The notes below the pieces were generated by a model. That model saw only the letters and a program-made list of their open reading frames with translations, was not told the DNA's origin and did no database searches. A stretch of DNA of 64,000 nt, taken from the IMG/VR virus record IMGVR_UViG_3300042515_001753, positions 1-64,000 of that record; one strand, 5' to 3'. The translations under genes were made by a program, and so were the position numbers. Positions 9,989 to 38,111 of the stretch are shown piece after piece; the first letter of the stretch is position 1, and each line of letters starts with the position of its first letter.

Positions 9989-11774
9989 TCAACCGATTGA
10001 CGGTGCCGTTAAAGCAACTTCTTGAGTAGAAGCGGCAGCAAGGTCAAGTGGAAAATTGTGAGCATTCCGTTCATGCCGTTTTTGTTATCGTAAGAACTCT
10101 TTATTTCTTACTTCTTACTGTCGCCAGTAAGACCAGACTATCTCTTCATCCGTTCTGGATGCTGGGCATTCGTGGGTAGATTATTGTTGGAACTCACTAC
10201 CTAGTCGTTAGACCTGCCGAAGAACCTATGTCCTCTTCGGATTGGTACGGGATTGTCTACTTGAGAGTTTCCCCGTTTAACCCAGTTTCGTCAAGGAATA
10301 TTCCTATTCCAGGGTGACTACATTTAGGAAATCACTTCCATACCAAGACCAGCACGATTAAGAATGTCAGCCCAAGTAGGAATTACTCGGTTTTGACTAT
10401 CAACGATGGACTGGTTAAAATTAAAACCGTTGCACTAGACCCATAAGTTTTCCATCCTTATGGAGTGGACTATATCTTCATCCCAGTAGGATGTCGGACG
10501 CTTAAACCTGTTATTAAGGAAACTATATTCCTCAGGTAGTCTCTGAACCTTTCTTGAGTGTACTCAAGACTTGGCTGCTGATTGCCCTTTTATTTGGAGG
10601 GTTTCCAGCAATTCATCCGATGTTTGCCGTTAAATTGCTTTAACGGAACCCCAATTGAGGTTAAAAGCCATCGTAGAAACCCCGAGAGCAGTGAACCAAA
10701 TTCCAACAACAGGCCATGTAGCAAGAAAGAAATGAAGCGACCTAGAGTTATTAAACGAAGCATATTGAAAAATAAGGCGTCCAAAATAACCATGAGCGGC
10801 AACGATATTGTATGTCTCTTCTTCTTGTCCGAACTTGTAACCATAATTCTGTGATTCAGTTTCTGTAGTTTCACGAACGAGTGACGAAGTAACCAAAGAA
10901 CCGTGCATCGCAGAGAACAGTGAACCACCGAACACACCAGCAACTCCAAGCATGTGGAATGGGTGCATAAGGATGTTATGTTCTGCCTGGAATACAAGCA
11001 TATAGTTAAAAGTACCAGAGATGCCTAGTGGCATAGCGTCAGAGAAAGAACCTTGACCGAAGGGATAGACCAAGAATACGGCACTCGCAGCAGCAACAGG
11101 TGCTGAGTAAGCGACGCAAATCCAAGGACGCATACCTAGACGGTAAGAAAGTTCCCATTCACGACCCATATAAGCATAGATGCCGATGAGGAAGTGAAAT
11201 ACAACGAGTTGGAATGGACCCCCATTATAGCAATCGGGGGACTATATGTTTCCATATAGATTGGACTATATCTTCACCTTATTTCTATTTAAGGTGTTGG
11301 GCGCTAATCTGGTATTACTCAACACGCTTGTTGACCCCAGTAGTCTCTGAACCTTCCACAGAAGTATCGTCTGTGGCTTGGCTGCTGATTGCCTTGTCGT
11401 ATAAACGATTTAGGGTTCCAGCAATTCACCCAATTTATAGTGACCCTATTTTACTTAAGCCACTCATCAAGACTTGCAGCTTCCCAGATTGGGTAGAAAT
11501 GCAGTCCGATAGCATTAGAAGAAGGAACAACGGCACCAGAGATGATGTTGTTACCATACATTAGAGAACCCGCTACTGGTTCACGAATGCCGTCAATGTC
11601 CACTGGGGGAGCACCAACGAAAGCGATAATGAAGCAAACCGTTGCCGCAAGAAGGCAAGGCACCATCAATACACCAAACCACCCGACATAAAGACGATTA
11701 TTGGTAGATGTAATCCAGTCACAGAAATCGTTCCAAGTATTTGTGGAACGTTGTTGAGCAATTGTAGCAGTCAT
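9989..11774 (-). CDS. psbA: Photosystem II D1 protein; exons 11458-11774, 10658-11230, 10331-10432, 9989-10076
   Basis: Exons total 1080 nt = 359 aa + stop; junctions restore EWL-YNGGP, FNL-NGFNF and [16 protein letters not shown] with H332/E333 at canonical numbering. Confidence 0.97.
10077..10330 (-). mobile_element. Group I intron 3 in psbA (254 nt, codon 331)
   Basis: P AAACGGGGAA, Q AATCCCGTA, R GTCTAACGACTA, S AAGAGATAGTCT; P1 GTGAT/GTCAC; terminal G. Confidence 0.93.
10433..10657 (-). mobile_element. Group I intron 2 in psbA (225 nt, codon 297)
   Basis: Same P/Q/R/S words as intron 1; P1 AACCT/GGGTT; terminal G. Confidence 0.95.
11231..11457 (-). mobile_element. Group I intron 1 in psbA (227 nt, codon 106)
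   Basis: Exon ends in U, intron ends in G; P AATTGCTGGAA, Q AATCAGCAG, R GTTCAGAGACTA, S AAGATATAGTCC; P1 AGTGGCT/GGTCACT. Confidence 0.95.
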
Positions 11775-11789
11775 TTAAATAAAAAGGGT

Positions 11790-11911
11790 AAGTATGAGTT
11801 CGGGGGAACGAACTGGTTACATTATGTTCCACGACACCCTCCATCGTGGATATGAGGGATTCTTTACTTCTCGTGATCCCGGTTGGAGAAGACACGGTTC
11901 TTAATCCGTGT
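11790..11911 (-). ncRNA. Structured psbA 5' leader (probably PhotoRC-II-like)
   Basis: Hairpins CACGG/CCGTG, CCACGAT/GTCGTGG (loop GAGGG complementary to upstream CCCTC), AGTTCG/CGAACT; family name from memory. Confidence 0.65.
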
Positions 11912-31132: not shown

Positions 31133-31215
31133 CGGAAAGAACAGGAATCGAACCTGCGAAGTTTTTACACCCAGCCGCTTTCAAGGCGGTGTCCTCGACC
31201 AACCGGACTCTTTCC
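31133..31215 (-). tRNA. tRNA-Ser(TGA)
   Basis: Cloverleaf with long variable arm; loop CTTGAAA. Confidence 0.9.
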
Positions 31216-31226
31216 AAAATAAGTCC

Positions 31227-33549: not shown

Positions 33550-35034
33550 TCAGAATGTGAACTTAGTCTGGACTACACCACCCCACTTGCTGGAATCTTG
33601 ATAACGCTGATTGTTATCAACATAGAACAGAGCAGGAGTAATGCTGATGTTATCGGTGACTTGGAACTTGTAGAAGATTTCAAGCAGAGTTGCATCATCT
33701 ACACCAGCGGTTTCGGCAGAAGGTGCTTGACCCAAAGCAATACCAGCAGAGTTACCCTTAGCAAAGACATCGCTCCACTGAAGACCAACCATCCAAGAAT
33801 TGGAATCAGTAGCATCACCCGAACCAGGAGTACCACTTACACCATTATATCCATAAGCAGCAGAAACGGAAGGAACCCAACCAGATTGTTGTGGTTGCCA
33901 ATAAGCATTAAGAGCAACACTATTGGATTCTTGACCAGCAGCAAGAGTACCATTAGCACTCAAGAGACCGTTGTAGGTGCGCGAACGAGTGCCTTCAGTA
34001 CCATAACGGTAACCTACGGCAACACCCCACTGAGGAGCACGATAACCAACTTGAGCAAGCAGGTTCAGAGCACCATCAGCATTGAATACACCAGTTTCGG
34101 AATCATCACCGTTCTGAGCAACATAGTTCAGACCAGCAACAAATCCACCTTGACCTTTCTTGGTAGGTTGTTTCCACTGAGCACCAAAACCAGCACCAGT
34201 TGCCTTGTTATAGACACCGGGAACACCAGAAACAGCAAAGAAGTCAAGAATTTCTGACTTATAAGCAGAAGGAATCCATGCCATCTCGGTATTACGAACC
34301 AGAGGACCAGCAGTTAGAGTTAGACTCTTACTTACAGGGAACTGGTAGTAAAGACGATCGATCTCTACAGTTCTATCGGTAGATTCTGCCTTATCAAGTT
34401 TGAACAAAGAAGAACTAGAACCAAAAGGATCGCTACTGAAGTTACCGGAACGAAGACGAGTACGGAGCAAGTCCTTACCAGTAAACGAGGTATCAAAGTT
34501 CAGACGCAGATCATAGTTGAATGCGGTGTTACCCACATCAGCACCTTTATTGGTTTCAAGACTAGGAACTCCACCAAGCATGAAATTGACTTCACCCTTG
34601 AGTTTAGTAGTGGTAGAGAATTGTGTTGCTTCCAAGTTTCCAACACGGTTCTCCAGACCATCTACACGACCCTTGAGTACTGCAAGTTCACTCTTGAATT
34701 CGTTCAGCAGTCGTTGAAGTTCATCTGTAGTTTCAGTCACACGATCCAAACAGGCATTCAGCAGTGCTGCTGCTTCAAAGCGAGTCATTGCCTGACCACC
34801 TTTGTATGTGCCGTTAGGATAACCAGCAACGCAACCATAACGGTCTACGAGGTTGGTAAGTGCCTGATATGCCCAATCAGTAGGTTGGACATCAGAGAAT
34901 TGAGTAACACTTGTAACCTGTGCTGCCGAAGCATACTTATTGACATCCTCAGTATTGAGTTCTGCAGCGATAGCAGCAGGAGCAACAAGACCCAGAGCAA
35001 CAGGGACGAGCATTAGTTTTTTAAGAAAATTCAT
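33550..35034 (-). CDS. Cyanobacterial outer-membrane porin (Som/OprB-type with SLH domain)
   Basis: FSDVQPTDWAYQAL..YGCVAGYP, TRFEAAALL, QFSTTTKLKGE, terminal Phe. Confidence 0.95.
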   Translation of the reverse strand: MNFLKKLMLVPVALGLVAPAAIAAELNTEDVNKYASAAQVTSVTQFSDVQPTDWAYQALTNLVDRYGCVAGYPNGTYKGGQAMTRFEAAALLNACLDRVTETTDELQRLLNEFKSELAVLKGRVDGLENRVGNLEATQFSTTTKLKGEVNFMLGGVPSLETNKGADVGNTAFNYDLRLNFDTSFTGKDLLRTRLRSGNFSSDPFGSSSSLFKLDKAESTDRTVEIDRLYYQFPVSKSLTLTAGPLVRNTEMAWIPSAYKSEILDFFAVSGVPGVYNKATGAGFGAQWKQPTKKGQGGFVAGLNYVAQNGDDSETGVFNADGALNLLAQVGYRAPQWGVAVGYRYGTEGTRSRTYNGLLSANGTLAAGQESNSVALNAYWQPQQSGWVPSVSAAYGYNGVSGTPGSGDATDSNSWMVGLQWSDVFAKGNSAGIALGQAPSAETAGVDDATLLEIFYKFQVTDNISITPALFYVDNNQRYQDSSKWGGVVQTKFTF

Positions 35035-35093
35035 ATAGTTCGTTAAGAATTACAACTACGAAGTTTATTTAGACCCCCTGATATTTTAGGGGA

Positions 35094-35164
35094 AGCGGAT
35101 ACACGGATTTGAACCGAGGATAAAAGTTTGGAAAACTCTTGTGTTACCACTACACCATATCCGC
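35094..35164 (-). tRNA. tRNA-Gly(TCC)
   Basis: Cloverleaf; loop TTTCCAA. Confidence 0.92.
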
Positions 35165-35166
35165 AA

Positions 35167-35240
35167 TGTTGAGAGTGGAAGGTTTCGCATCCTTCTACTG
35201 TATCCCTTGTCGGGGTGCCTTACTTTTGGCATCACTCTCA
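35167..35240 (-). ncRNA. tRNA-sized cloverleaf RNA without a canonical anticodon arm
   Basis: TGAGAGTG/CACTCTCA, TGCC/GGCA, CCC/GGG, GAAGG/CCTTC. Confidence 0.6.
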
Positions 35241-35291
35241 GCGTACTTCCTTCACACCATGGAATTATAAGACATAATGAGTATTATGTCA

Positions 35292-35362
35292 AGCCCCATA
35301 ACAGAATTGAACTGTTCTCTGCAGTTTACAAAACTGCTGCATCACCACAATGCTTATAGGGC
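35292..35362 (-). tRNA. tRNA-Thr(TGT)
   Basis: Cloverleaf; loop TTTGTAA. Confidence 0.9.
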
Positions 35363-35670
35363 GGATTGTGTAATTCTCTATGGCAGTTAGCACAAACAAG
35401 AATACACTTTTTTGCTTCTTCTCTTTGTTTTTCAAGAGAAAGAGTAGACCCAATTATACCACCTTCCTTTACGGTTGGGTCAAGATGGTGGAAATCTAAT
35501 GCGGCAATGCACTTATTATACCCACATATAGAGCAACAGTTTCCTGCTTCCTCTTTTAGAATAGCAACATTTTTCCTTCTGGTAGCGGATACACGCTCTG
35601 CGCTTTTCTTTGCCCAATCAGGATTTTTTGCTTTTCTTTCAGCATAAGTTCGTGTTTCTATTTTTGCCAT
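35326..35670 (-). CDS. HNH endonuclease in the tRNA cluster
   Basis: CSICGY..ALDFHHLDP..KCILVCANCHRELH; late promoter 35692-35699. Confidence 0.88.
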   Translation of the reverse strand: MAKIETRTYAERKAKNPDWAKKSAERVSATRRKNVAILKEEAGNCCSICGYNKCIAALDFHHLDPTVKEGGIIGSTLSLEKQREEAKKCILVCANCHRELHNPPYKHCGDAAVL

Positions 35671-35706
35671 TATTATTGGTATAACTTTTATTATTTATAC
35701 CGATAA

Positions 35707-35779
35707 CTCCCCCACCTGGACTCGAACCAGGAACACTTTGATTAACAGTCAAATACTCTGCCAATTGAGCTATAGGGGA
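35707..35779 (-). tRNA. tRNA-Asn(GTT)
   Basis: Cloverleaf; loop CTGTTAA. Confidence 0.95.
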
Positions 35780-37732: not shown

Positions 37733-37735
37733 AAG

Positions 37736-37809
37736 CGTCCCGAGCTGGATTCGAACCAGCGACCCACATCTTAGAAGGATGTTGCACTAATCCGCTGTGC
37801 TATCGGGAC
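37736..37809 (-). tRNA. tRNA-Arg(TCT)
   Basis: Loop CTTCTAA. Confidence 0.95.
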
Positions 37810-37922
37810 ATAAGGAACCTCCCTGTTTGTGCTTCTATGAGAGGCATGGGAGGTGTGGGATTTATAAGAAGTTTGGACCTCCTCCACCCGTGAACCTACT
37901 ATAAGGCATCAGGGTACTAAAG

Positions 37923-38111
37923 TCAACCCTTTGCTTCCTTACGGGCGTTCTTCTCTTCGGTAATCTCGCCTCTACGGGTCTTGACGAGTTTGGCAACTTC
38001 CTGAAGTGCCTTACGGGCACGAGTACCGGCGGCACTATTACCAGCAGTGAACTTTTCGTCTTCTACTTTCCACGCTTCAATAGCAGTCAGTAGTTCTTGT
38101 GATACAGACAT
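37923..38111 (-). CDS. Small basic protein, histone H1-like Hc1 N-terminal-like
   Basis: EKFTAGNSAAGTRARKALQE; GGAG RBS before the ATG at 38111. Confidence 0.7.
   Translation of the reverse strand: MSVSQELLTAIEAWKVEDEKFTAGNSAAGTRARKALQEVAKLVKTRRGEITEEKNARKEAKG

What the first reader, a model, noticed from the sequence alone, without database searches (positions are those of the whole stretch)
35167..35240. 74-nt cloverleaf with a collapsed anticodon arm
Seen: 8-bp closing stem, 4-bp D-like arm, a 3-bp arm with a 5-nt loop (GACAA), a T-like arm with loop ATGCGAAA, and an ACA 3' end 2 nt from tRNA-Gly. The other stems are perfect, which argues against simple decay. Promoter TTGACA-17-TATAAT at 35264-35292.
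Basis: partly seen in the sequence, partly recalled or inferred. Interest (0 to 1): 0.6.

Follow-up and report, generated by a model that had tools for sequence, protein, structure and literature searches.

The report
Conserved tRNA-shaped phage RNA without anticodon
A freshwater cyanophage carries, just ahead of its glycine tRNA gene, a small gene for an RNA shaped like a tRNA but with no usable anticodon. It is kept almost letter for letter in about a hundred phage contigs, so it is a working tRNA look-alike of unknown job, not a dead gene.

Summary
The cloverleaf is real. It lies on the minus strand at 35240..35167 and folds exactly as described (-26.4 kcal/mol, z = -5.4). No tRNA finder or Rfam model calls it.

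Comparison with other contigs refines the anatomy:
- 7-bp acceptor-like stem plus an unpaired A
- 3-bp D-like stem
- 3-bp arm with a GAYAA pentaloop
- 5-bp T-like stem with G53:C61 and a loop A-UGCRA-AA

It follows a perfect sigma-70 promoter and lies 5 nt (4-6 nt in most related contigs) upstream of tRNA-Gly(UCC). It occurs 110 times (16 variants) in freshwater and estuarine cyanomyovirus contigs. It is absent from 185,579 prokaryote genomes and from cultured phages.

The core is about 98% identical across contigs, while the flanking tRNA-Gly and tRNA-Thr are only about 73% identical. It is therefore not a decaying pseudogene. Stem changes are one compensatory pair and several wobble changes that pair only on the minus strand.

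The same leader position can instead hold a covarying GNRA hairpin, a 50-nt module, a 100-nt tRNA-like RNA, an abiF antitoxin-type motif, or nothing.

Best reading: a non-decoding tRNA mimic, cut out by the tRNA-processing enzymes and acting in trans, possibly as a decoy. Processing and function are inferred, not shown.

The parts
35264..35292 (-). Sigma-70-type promoter: -35 TTGACA at 35292..35287 and -10 TATAAT at 35269..35264. The spacer holds an 8-bp inverted repeat (35290..35271). The -35 hexamer starts on the last base of tRNA-Thr.
   Evidence: It is a 12/12 consensus match. It is conserved in related contigs. The inverted repeat is kept by compensatory and G.U-type changes in 51 distinct promoters.
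35241..35263 (-). 23-nt leader holding the conserved GUGUGAAG (35257..35250). It may form a small 5' hairpin, GUGUG / UACGC, with the loop AAGGAAG.
   Evidence: The sequence is, the fold and the conservation. The cloverleaf does not need it: contigs with an HNH gene inserted upstream lack the leader but keep the cloverleaf.
35170..35239 (-). 70-nt tRNA-shaped core, in window coordinates: acceptor-like stem 35239..35233 with 35177..35171; D-like stem GCC/GGC 35230..35228 with 35219..35217; D-like loop 35227..35220; 3-bp arm 35214..35212 with 35206..35204; loop GACAA 35211..35207; 8-nt linker 35203..35196; T-like stem 35195..35191 with 35182..35178; T-like loop 35190..35183; discriminator-like A at 35170.
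   Evidence: The fold is, the covariance model R1, the variants, and the conservation against the neighbouring tRNAs.
35165..35169 (-). 5-nt spacer ACAUU between the core and tRNA-Gly. It is variable in other contigs (4-6 nt, or 68-143 nt where there are insertions).
35094..35164 (-). tRNA-Gly(UCC), the gene that follows the cloverleaf in every contig that reaches far enough.
   Evidence: ARAGORN and Rfam give 63.7 bits. The linkage holds in 43 of 43 such contigs.
35074..35093 (-). Trailer hairpin (CCCC ... GGGGG) after tRNA-Gly, followed by CUAAAUAAA. It is a possible unit end or processing site ahead of the porin gene (35034..33550).
   Evidence: The sequence is. It recurs, with changed stems, in related contigs. 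Its function was not tested.
35292..35362 (-). tRNA-Thr(UGU), the usual upstream neighbour and the end of the preceding unit.

Best explanation
The element is a functional, non-decoding tRNA mimic encoded by a T4-like freshwater cyanophage.

Shown:
- It is the first element of a short unit: sigma-70 promoter, 23-nt leader, cloverleaf, 5 nt, tRNA-Gly(UCC).
- It keeps the parts of a tRNA that the maturation enzymes read: a 7-bp acceptor stem stacked on a 5-bp T stem, G53:C61, a U...A T-loop core with C56 and a purine at 57, one D-loop G, an unpaired A after the stem, and tRNA-like spacing to the next tRNA.
- In place of the anticodon limb it has a 3-bp stem capped by a GNRA-like pentaloop, GA(Y)AA.
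- It is under much stronger constraint than the real tRNAs beside it.
- It survives intact when the leader, the promoter or the adjacency to tRNA-Gly is lost.

Inferred:
- RNase P cuts at its 5' end and at the 5' end of tRNA-Gly.
- RNase Z and the CCA-adding enzyme finish its 3' end, as they do for the other CCA-less tRNAs of the cluster.
- This releases a stable RNA of about 70-74 nt that cannot decode.
- That RNA acts in trans by occupying a protein that recognises the tRNA elbow and acceptor end. The most plausible target is a host tRNA-targeting defence or toxin enzyme, for which an RNA without an anticodon loop would be an uncleavable decoy.
For: Structure and strand:
- The fold is far more stable than shuffles.
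- All stem changes among 16 variants are one compensatory C:G to U:A change or changes to G:U. The G:U changes pair only on the minus strand.

Constraint:
- The core has mean identity 98.5% (minimum 95.7%). tRNA-Gly has 73.7% and tRNA-Thr 72.2% in the same contigs.
- The leader-matching set gives the same picture: 98.1% for the core, 73.9% for tRNA-Gly and 90.5% for the leader.
- The loops are as invariant as the stems.

Linkage and autonomy:
- The next gene is tRNA-Gly(UCC) in all 43 contigs that reach far enough, mostly 4-6 nt away.
- The core stays intact when 68-143 nt are inserted before tRNA-Gly, and when an HNH gene replaces the promoter and leader.

Phage-specific and accessory:
- There is no match in 185,579 prokaryote genomes or in the phage isolate collection.
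- Contigs with the same promoter, leader and tRNA-Gly allele carry the cloverleaf, a hairpin or nothing.

Precedent in the same position:
- The abiF-motif RNA sits in the same promoter-leader-module-tRNA arrangement in this window (37853..37817) and in relatives. In L043 it shares one leader with a cloverleaf.
- The abiF-motif RNA is an experimentally shown RNA antitoxin that binds an AbiF HEPN toxin (bioRxiv 10.1101/2025.04.15.648962). This phage record has no Abi_2 protein.

RNA libraries:
- Metatranscriptome assemblies from three studies contain the cloverleaf joined to tRNA-Gly.
Against: - No RNA ends, CCA addition or discrete small RNA could be shown. The RNA-library evidence is contigs only, and one contig also spans the promoter, so read-through or DNA carry-over is possible.
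- Covariation power is low: one compensatory pair, reached by 24 of 500 shuffles.
- The T-like loop has 8 nt rather than 7, and the D-like loop has one G rather than GG, so elbow formation and RNase P recognition are assumed.
- A plain 7-bp GNRA hairpin occupies the same position in most related phages. That fits a simple cis role for the closing stem.
- No binding partner is known, and no defence gene is linked to the element.
- High identity next to diverged flanks could partly reflect recent horizontal spread near homing endonuclease genes rather than constraint alone.
Confidence: 0.45

Rival explanations
1. It is a cis-acting leader structure. Only the closing helix next to tRNA-Gly matters, for example to stabilise the 5' end of the precursor, to insulate the purine-rich leader from the tRNA body, or to set the RNase P context. 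The cloverleaf would then be one elaborate version of the common leader hairpin.
For: - In leader-anchored contigs the same position holds a 6-8-bp GNRA hairpin in 85 loci, against the cloverleaf in 39 and the 50-nt module in 15.
- 5 of the 6 hairpin pairs show compensatory changes.
- The outer 6 bp of the hairpin stem and of the cloverleaf stem are alike: UGGGAG/CUCCCA against UGAGAG/CUCUCA.
Against: - A helix-only role does not explain why the three inner arms, both large loops and the 8-nt linker are nearly invariant.
- It does not explain why the core is kept when it is moved 68-143 nt away from tRNA-Gly, or when it is stripped of leader and promoter.
- Some close relatives lack the whole leader and keep tRNA-Gly.
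Confidence: 0.27
2. It is a decaying tRNA pseudogene: a former tRNA whose anticodon arm collapsed and which is drifting.
For: It lies in a tRNA cluster, at tRNA-like spacing, with a tRNA-like shape. One contig (L220) carries a larger, 100-nt tRNA-like RNA in the same position, which suggests descent from a tRNA.
Against: - It is conserved far better than the functional tRNAs on either side.
- 15 of the 16 variants have no disruptive stem change. The exception is a single A.A mismatch in L243.
- Similarity to 729 distinct phage tRNAs does not exceed shuffled controls.
Confidence: 0.03
3. It is a ligand- or protein-sensing regulatory aptamer (riboswitch-like four-way junction) that controls expression of tRNA-Gly and the downstream porin and pstS genes.
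For: It sits close to a promoter, has very conserved loops and junctions, and carries a GNRA-like loop that could make a tertiary contact.
Against: - It matches no Rfam aptamer class at E <= 10.
- It has no expression platform: the next tRNA starts 4-6 nt after the closing stem, with no terminator or ribosome-binding site to sequester.
- The element is optional among close relatives.
Confidence: 0.06
4. It is an aminoacylatable tRNA-like carrier. It would be charged by a synthetase that ignores the anticodon (Ser, Leu or Ala type) and used outside the ribosome, or it would be a true decoder with an exotic anticodon arm.
For: It has a 3-bp D-like stem and a short hairpin after it, as in class II tRNAs, an A at the discriminator position, and an intact acceptor/T helix. 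That the synthetases for Ser, Leu and Ala do not read the anticodon is established knowledge cited from memory.
Against: - It has no G3:U70 pair and no long variable arm in the usual place.
- A 5-nt loop on a 3-bp stem cannot present an anticodon.
- It has no similarity to the phages' own tRNA-Ser genes.
- No partner transferase gene is known nearby.
Confidence: 0.07
5. It is a DNA-level feature: a conserved recombination or homing-endonuclease target cassette whose RNA has no function.
For: - HNH genes or their remnants sit directly upstream (the L020/L034 type) or downstream (L055/L056) of the core, and one lies next to tRNA-Thr in the window.
- Modules swap between identical flanks.
Against: - The substitutions respect RNA pairing on one strand only, through G:U wobble changes and one compensatory pair.
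- An endonuclease target explains why a conserved sequence is exploited, not why it is conserved.
- The fold is exceptionally stable.
Confidence: 0.05

Closest known systems
Phage T4 stable RNAs species 1 and 2 (rnaC, rnaD) in the T4 tRNA cluster (recalled from memory, not compared here)
   Same: They are small stable RNAs of unknown function, encoded among the tRNA genes of a T4-type phage and co-processed with tRNAs.
   Different: They are longer (roughly 120-140 nt). No sequence was on hand to test homology. The present RNA is a compact 70-nt cloverleaf found so far only in uncultured cyanomyoviruses.
tRNA-like processing elements: plant mitochondrial t-elements (PMC1920247), and from memory mascRNA and the gammaherpesvirus-68 tRNA-like RNAs
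   Same: These are tRNA-shaped RNAs that are not decoders. They are recognised by RNase P and RNase Z through the acceptor/T helix and the elbow (PMC4919913 describes the elbow being clamped). Their excision defines the ends of neighbouring RNAs.
   Different: Those examples are eukaryotic or organellar. Here the neighbour is itself a tRNA, so no extra processing signal is needed. The element is also far more conserved than a mere cleavage signal requires.
abiF-motif RNA (Rfam RF03085), the RNA antitoxin of AbiF HEPN toxins (bioRxiv 10.1101/2025.04.15.648962)
   Same: It occupies the same arrangement in this phage group: promoter, leader, small structured RNA, a few nt, then the first tRNA. 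In L043 it shares a leader with a cloverleaf. It is an orphan in the phage record, which has no Abi_2 protein.
   Different: The fold and sequence are unrelated: a 37-nt hairpin against a four-helix junction. The cloverleaf does not match RF03085.
Phage tRNAs that escape or neutralise tRNA-targeting defences, and the pseudo-ToxI RNA of phage PhiTE (recalled from memory)
   Same: Both are phage-encoded RNAs that counter host toxins aimed at RNA, either by replacing a cleaved tRNA or by mimicking an antitoxin.
   Different: Those tRNAs are full decoders with altered anticodon loops. This RNA has no anticodon loop at all. A decoy role is a hypothesis, not a result.
YrlA, the bacterial and phage Y RNA with a tRNA-like domain (RF02553)
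   Same: It is a non-decoding RNA with tRNA-like acceptor, D and T elements.
   Different: YrlA is larger and carries a Ro-binding helix. No YrlA match covers the cloverleaf.

Membership tests
canonical tRNA (Rfam RF00005 / ARAGORN) | 7-bp acceptor stem with an unpaired discriminator base | tested here: met
   GAGAGUG/CACUCUC is invariant or wobble-compatible in 15 of 16 variants. The base before the stem varies, while the A after it is fixed.
canonical tRNA (Rfam RF00005 / ARAGORN) | 5-bp anticodon stem with a 7-nt loop carrying U33 and an anticodon | tested here: not met
   The arm is a 3-bp stem with a 5-nt loop GAYAA in all 16 variants.
canonical tRNA (Rfam RF00005 / ARAGORN) | T arm: 5-bp stem, G53:C61, 7-nt loop T54-psi55-C56-R57-A58 | tested here: inconclusive
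   The 5-bp stem with a G:C closing pair is kept. The loop has 8 nt, A-UGCRA-AA. U, C, R (G or A) and A are in the right order, but there is an extra A, and a G where psi55 would be.
canonical tRNA (Rfam RF00005 / ARAGORN) | D loop with G18 G19 | tested here: not met
   The loop AAAAGUAA has a single G. The stem has 3 bp.
canonical tRNA (Rfam RF00005 / ARAGORN) | score above the family threshold | tested here: not met
   There is no RF00005 match even at E <= 10. ARAGORN makes no call at default settings, at -ps80, at -ps60, in -mt mode or in intron mode.
tRNA pseudogene | recognisable sequence descent from a functional tRNA | tested here: not met
   The best local alignment score against 729 distinct phage tRNAs is 22, within the range 19-26 given by shuffled cloverleaves.
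tRNA pseudogene | relaxed constraint relative to functional neighbours | tested here: not met
   The core is 98.5% identical, against 73.7% for tRNA-Gly and 72.2% for tRNA-Thr. A second sample gives 98.1% against 73.9%.
tRNA-like RNase P / RNase Z substrates (t-elements, mascRNA type) | 12-bp acceptor/T coaxial helix with a T-loop-type cap and a single-stranded 3' trailer | tested here: met
   The helix is 7 + 5 bp with no intervening base. The T-like loop and the trailers CAUU / ACAUU are present.
tRNA-like RNase P / RNase Z substrates (t-elements, mascRNA type) | cleavage at both ends and CCA addition in vivo or in vitro | not testable with these tools
   Only assembled contigs of RNA libraries were available, and they cannot show RNA ends.
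abiF-motif RNA (RF03085) | match to the 37-nt hairpin model | tested here: not met
   No RF03085 match lies in 35000-35450. The true abiF motif of the window is at 37853..37817.
riboswitch | known aptamer class plus an expression platform | tested here: not met
   There is no Rfam aptamer match at E <= 10. The closing stem is followed after 4-6 nt by a tRNA, not by a terminator or ribosome-binding site.
T4 species 1/2 stable RNAs | sequence or structure homology | not tested
   No T4 rnaC or rnaD sequence was fetched. Only the shared location in a tRNA cluster is noted.

The most novel reading that the evidence does not exclude
The 5' leaders of tRNA units in these cyanomyoviruses may be cassette sites for small anti-defence RNAs that tRNA processing sets free.
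- The cloverleaf would be an uncleavable tRNA decoy. It has the elbow and acceptor end but no anticodon loop, so it could jam a host tRNA-targeting nuclease or tRNA-modifying toxin.
- The abiF-motif RNA in the neighbouring leader would be a stolen antitoxin.
- The hairpin, the 50-nt module and 'module D' would be further members.
- The alternative forms found between identical flanks (cloverleaf, hairpin, 50-nt module, or nothing) would then be the trace of an arms race.
Probability: 0.22. Interest if true: 0.85.

Novelty: new variant of a known kind. Interest (0 to 1): 0.64.

Why it matters
Phage tRNA clusters are usually read as codon-usage or anti-nuclease spare parts. This one holds a non-decoding, tRNA-shaped RNA that is better conserved than the tRNAs around it, is specific to phages, and is missing from Rfam.

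It shares its genomic position with a motif now known to be an RNA antitoxin. If it is a decoy or cofactor for a tRNA-binding protein, it would add an RNA-only counter-defence class. It would also give a concrete way to find such RNAs: look in the leaders of phage tRNA units.

If instead it acts only in cis, it still documents an unrecognised, covarying leader architecture for phage tRNA-Gly that is present in the cultured phages S-SRM01 and S-SKS1.

Tried and rejected
- Rfam 15, permissive scans. The cloverleaf region, the L220 tRNA-like region, and the 50-nt module and 'module D' gave no family match for any of these modules.
- ARAGORN with relaxed thresholds, in mitochondrial mode and in intron mode made no call.
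- Covariance model R1 found one copy in the window and in the whole 146-kb record. It found no diverged paralogue in 54 related loci.
- BLAST of the core against 50,697 phage records gave nothing.
- Exact-pattern scans of 185,579 prokaryote genomes found neither the cloverleaf nor the leader-plus-hairpin. A host origin is therefore not supported.
- Loops-only patterns with free stems, meant to find covarying relatives, returned only near-identical copies. Covariation statistics stay weak as a result.
- A hammerhead or other self-cleaver was considered and dropped. By eye, the core motifs do not fit, and the Rfam ribozyme models gave no match.
- A glycine riboswitch was considered because of GAGAG... 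and ...CCGAAGGGG-like strings in L220. It was dropped because there was no RF00504 match.
- A coding reading was considered: the 49-aa ORF 35235..35086. It was dropped because it runs through tRNA-Gly and its frame is broken by the variable spacer and by insertions.
- A tRNA-Ser (class II) origin was suggested by the 3-bp D-like stem, but it has no sequence support.
- No CCA-adding enzyme (PF01743) is present in the record.
- Supplementary files of the viral structured-RNA catalogue PMC10690425 are not held, so I could not check whether the motif is listed there.
- The sequencing-run evidence consists of contigs only, so it gives no RNA ends.

Full report
**Observation**

The element is the minus strand of window 35167-35240. 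The energy is -26.4 kcal/mol, against -12.5 +/- 2.6 for dinucleotide shuffles. That gives z = -5.39, and none of 200 shuffles folds as well.

The window is part of a 146-kb IMG/VR virus record. It is a T4-like cyanomyovirus:
- It carries PhotoRC-II and wcaG RNAs and three group I introns.
- It carries a porin gene and a pstS gene.
- It has 20 ARAGORN-called tRNA genes on the minus strand.

The cloverleaf is not among the called tRNAs. The Rfam tRNA model does not match it even at E <= 10. ARAGORN does not call it at 60% thresholds or in mitochondrial mode.

On the minus strand the layout is as follows:

| Feature | Coordinates |
|---|---|
| tRNA-Thr(UGU) | 35362..35292 |
| Promoter, a perfect TTGACA-17-TATAAT | 35292..35264 |
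| 23-nt leader | 35263..35241 |
| Cloverleaf (U35240, then the 70-nt core) | 35240..35170 |
| Spacer ACAUU | 35169..35165 |
| tRNA-Gly(UCC) | 35164..35094 |
| Trailer hairpin | 35093..35074 |
| Porin gene | 35034..33550 |

**Homologues**

Several independent searches retrieved copies:
- A 25-mer from the T-like arm and 3' strand found 43 IMG/VR contigs.
- A pattern that fixed only the loops and left every stem free found 44 contigs.
- A similar loops-only pattern, slightly relaxed at two loop positions, found 48 stretches in metagenome contigs.
- Two samples did not depend on the core. One held 80 loci anchored on the downstream porin protein. The other held loci anchored on the -10 box plus the leader word GUGUGAAG.

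Together these gave 110 instances and 16 distinct 70-nt variants.

Nothing was found in 50,697 phage isolate records or in one genome each of 185,579 prokaryote species. The element is therefore known only from uncultured lake and estuarine phages. Lake-water runs hold the stretch.

**Refined anatomy**

| Part | What the variants show |
|---|---|
| Closing stem | The base before it varies U/C/A while its supposed partner A is fixed. The stem is 7 bp plus an unpaired, discriminator-like A. |
| Position 9 | It varies U/A/C and pairs with A24 in only 10 of 16 variants. The D-like stem is therefore 3 bp, GCC/GGC. |
| T-like stem and loop | The stem keeps a G:C closing pair. The loop reads A-UGCRA-AA, and the R varies G/A. 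This is the canonical order U54, C56, purine 57, A58, with one extra A. |
| Short arm | It is CCC/GGG capped by GAYAA with a variable third base. From memory, this is the pattern of GNRA-like pentaloops such as phage P22 boxB. |
| Trailer | CAUU, ACAUU, CAAU or CAAAAU comes before tRNA-Gly. This matches the spacing of tandem tRNAs in the cluster. |

The RNA thus keeps what RNase P, RNase Z and the CCA-adding enzyme read on a tRNA. PMC4919913 describes RNase P clamping the tRNA elbow. The RNA lacks what the ribosome and most synthetases read.

**Is it decaying?**

No.
- Among 43 contigs the core is 98.5% identical on average (minimum 95.7%).
- In the same contigs the adjacent tRNA-Gly(UCC) has 15 distinct sequences and 73.7% mean identity (minimum 52.8%).
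- tRNA-Thr(UGU) has 12 distinct sequences and 72.2% mean identity.

That first sample was chosen by the core itself, so I repeated the comparison on the cloverleaf loci that match the promoter-plus-leader pattern. The result was 98.1% for the core (minimum 90.0%), 73.9% for tRNA-Gly and 90.5% for the leader. That set still includes loci first fetched by core patterns, so it is not fully independent of the core.

Changes in stems among the 16 variants:
- one compensatory pair, C28:G34 to U:A, in L188
- three positions changed to G:U (A2G, C58U, C62U)
- one A.A mismatch in a single contig

The G:U changes would be C.A mismatches on the plus strand, so the minus strand is the functional RNA. Because the family is so uniform, covariation has little power: 24 of 500 shuffles reach the observed score.

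No parent tRNA can be recognised. The best alignment score against 729 distinct phage tRNAs is 22, while shuffled cloverleaves reach 19-26.

**The leader position is a cassette site**

The core-independent samples show that tRNA-Gly(UCC) in this phage group is usually preceded by three things:
- the same promoter
- the word GUGUGAAG
- a stem-closed module that ends a few nt before the tRNA (4-6 nt for the cloverleaf)

The module takes several forms (counts):

| Module | Loci | Notes |
|---|---|---|
| 6-8-bp hairpin with a GNRA loop | 85 | 5 of 6 pairs have compensatory changes |
| Cloverleaf | 39 | the element studied here |
| 50-nt irregular hairpin with a GAAA loop | 15 | |
| 100-nt tRNA-like RNA | 1 (L220) | canonical T loop, 5-nt 'anticodon' loop; not matched by Rfam or ARAGORN |

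The outer six pairs of the hairpin stem and of the cloverleaf stem are alike. Contigs with the same promoter, leader and tRNA-Gly allele carry the cloverleaf (L015), the hairpin (L013), or only a remnant of the 3' strand (L012, L014, L064).

The cloverleaf is kept intact in three altered contexts:
- when an HNH gene replaces the promoter and leader (the L020/L034 type)
- when 68-143 nt are inserted between it and tRNA-Gly
- when the leader is nearly absent (L054, L030)

The unit under selection is therefore the cloverleaf itself. It is also dispensable in some lineages. Both features are typical of an accessory function.

**A known RNA in the same kind of position**

The window's abiF motif (RF03085, 44.8 bits, 37853..37817) lies between a promoter (37926..37898) and tRNA-Arg(UCU). 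It ends 7 nt before the tRNA.
- S-SRM01 has the same arrangement.
- In L043 an abiF motif lies 4 nt before tRNA-Gly, in one leader together with a cloverleaf and a further 64-70-nt module.
- Of 33 distinct abiF-like contexts in the fetched loci, 25 lie within 12 nt upstream of a tRNA.

The abiF-motif RNA has been shown to be an RNA antitoxin that binds and neutralises an AbiF/Abi_2 HEPN toxin (bioRxiv 10.1101/2025.04.15.648962). The phage record has no Abi_2 protein, so its motif is an orphan. This does not show what the cloverleaf does. It does show that leaders of tRNA units in these phages carry trans-acting RNAs, and that one of them belongs to the defence/counter-defence world.

**Expression**

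Six metatranscriptomic runs hold part of the stretch. Four runs from three studies were laid on the window.
- Contigs cover tRNA-Gly plus the cloverleaf, for example two 103-nt contigs at 35137-35239.
- One 159-nt contig reaches 35295, which includes the promoter.
- There is no depth over the HNH ORF (35446-35717).
- The same runs also contain the hairpin form.

Contigs cannot show RNA ends, and DNA carry-over cannot be excluded. This is weak support for transcription and gives no evidence on processing.

**Mechanism**

Shown:
- the promoter
- the fold and the functional strand
- strong constraint, stronger than on the neighbouring tRNAs
- autonomy from leader, promoter and adjacency to tRNA-Gly
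- restriction to phages

Inferred:
- excision by RNase P and RNase Z, with CCA addition, giving a free 70-74-nt RNA
- action in trans on a protein that reads the elbow and acceptor end

The most attractive target is a tRNA-directed host nuclease or toxin, for which an RNA without an anticodon loop would be an uncleavable competitor.

The main rival is a purely cis role of the closing helix, shared with the hairpin form. It explains the position but not the invariance of the inner arms and loops.

**Novelty**

tRNA-like non-decoders are known. Examples are the T4 stable RNAs, t-elements, mascRNA, YrlA and viral tRNA-like RNAs. The kind is therefore not new.

This particular fold is not in Rfam 15. 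It is not called by tRNA finders and was not found in any cultured phage. Its membership in a set of swappable leader modules has, as far as the searchable literature shows, not been described. I file it as a new variant of a known kind.

Noticed in passing
window 37817-37853 (-), with promoter 37926..37898 and tRNA-Arg(UCU) 37809..37735: An abiF-motif RNA (RF03085, 44.8 bits) sits in the leader of the first tRNA of the main array. The same arrangement occurs in S-SRM01 (L001 968-1004) and in L043 (4809-4845, before tRNA-Gly). The record has no Abi_2 protein, so this is an orphan antitoxin-type RNA in a lytic phage.
   Followed up: partly
window 35271-35290 (-), inside the promoter spacer: The inverted repeat GACAnnnn-N4-nnnnTGTC overlaps the -35 box. 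It is kept by compensatory and G.U-type changes in 51 distinct promoters. It looks like an RNA hairpin, perhaps the end of the tRNA-Thr unit, sharing its sequence with the next promoter.
   Followed up: partly
L016 1334-1401 (-), L024 5685-5759 (-), L178 12219-12291 (-): An optional 64-70-nt 'module D' lies between the cloverleaf and tRNA-Gly in 18 loci. It has a conserved closing helix and one compensatory pair. It has no Rfam match.
   Followed up: partly
L112 1241-1295 (+) and about 14 other loci: A 50-nt leader module (GUGGGG ... CCCCAC, with an inner GAAA-capped arm that covaries AGG/CCU against AGAG/CUCU) occupies the cloverleaf's place. It has no Rfam match.
   Followed up: partly
L220 3579-3677 (-): A 100-nt tRNA-like RNA occupies the same position. 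It has an 8-bp closing stem, a canonical T loop, an extra arm and a 5-nt 'anticodon' loop. Neither ARAGORN nor Rfam matches it.
   Followed up: partly
window 31133-31216 (-): A class II tRNA with the loop CUUGAAA, most likely tRNA-Ser(UGA). ARAGORN misses it. Rfam places it at 30.8 bits with the tRNA model and 42.2 bits with tRNA-Sec, below that family's threshold.
   Followed up: partly
window 35326-35670 (-): A 114-aa HNH-type endonuclease ORF whose 3' end overlaps the 5' part of tRNA-Thr. Related contigs carry HNH genes or remnants directly beside the cloverleaf.
   Followed up: no
window 10114-11479 (-): Three group I intron matches lie within 1.4 kb (108, 98 and 58 bits), next to a PhotoRC-II RNA at 11814-11904. 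This is probably a multiply interrupted photosystem gene.
   Followed up: no
L112 446-653 and L072 4169-4376: manA RNA motifs (110-114 bits) sit between tRNA genes inside phage tRNA clusters.
   Followed up: no
L043 5730-5982: A phage contig gives a cyanobacterial-type (permuted) tmRNA match at 83 bits, at the end of its tRNA array.
   Followed up: no
L021 12569-12636: Only the T-like arm and the 3' strand of the cloverleaf remain here, fused 3 nt after a tRNA-Ser(UGA). This is a deletion derivative.
   Followed up: no
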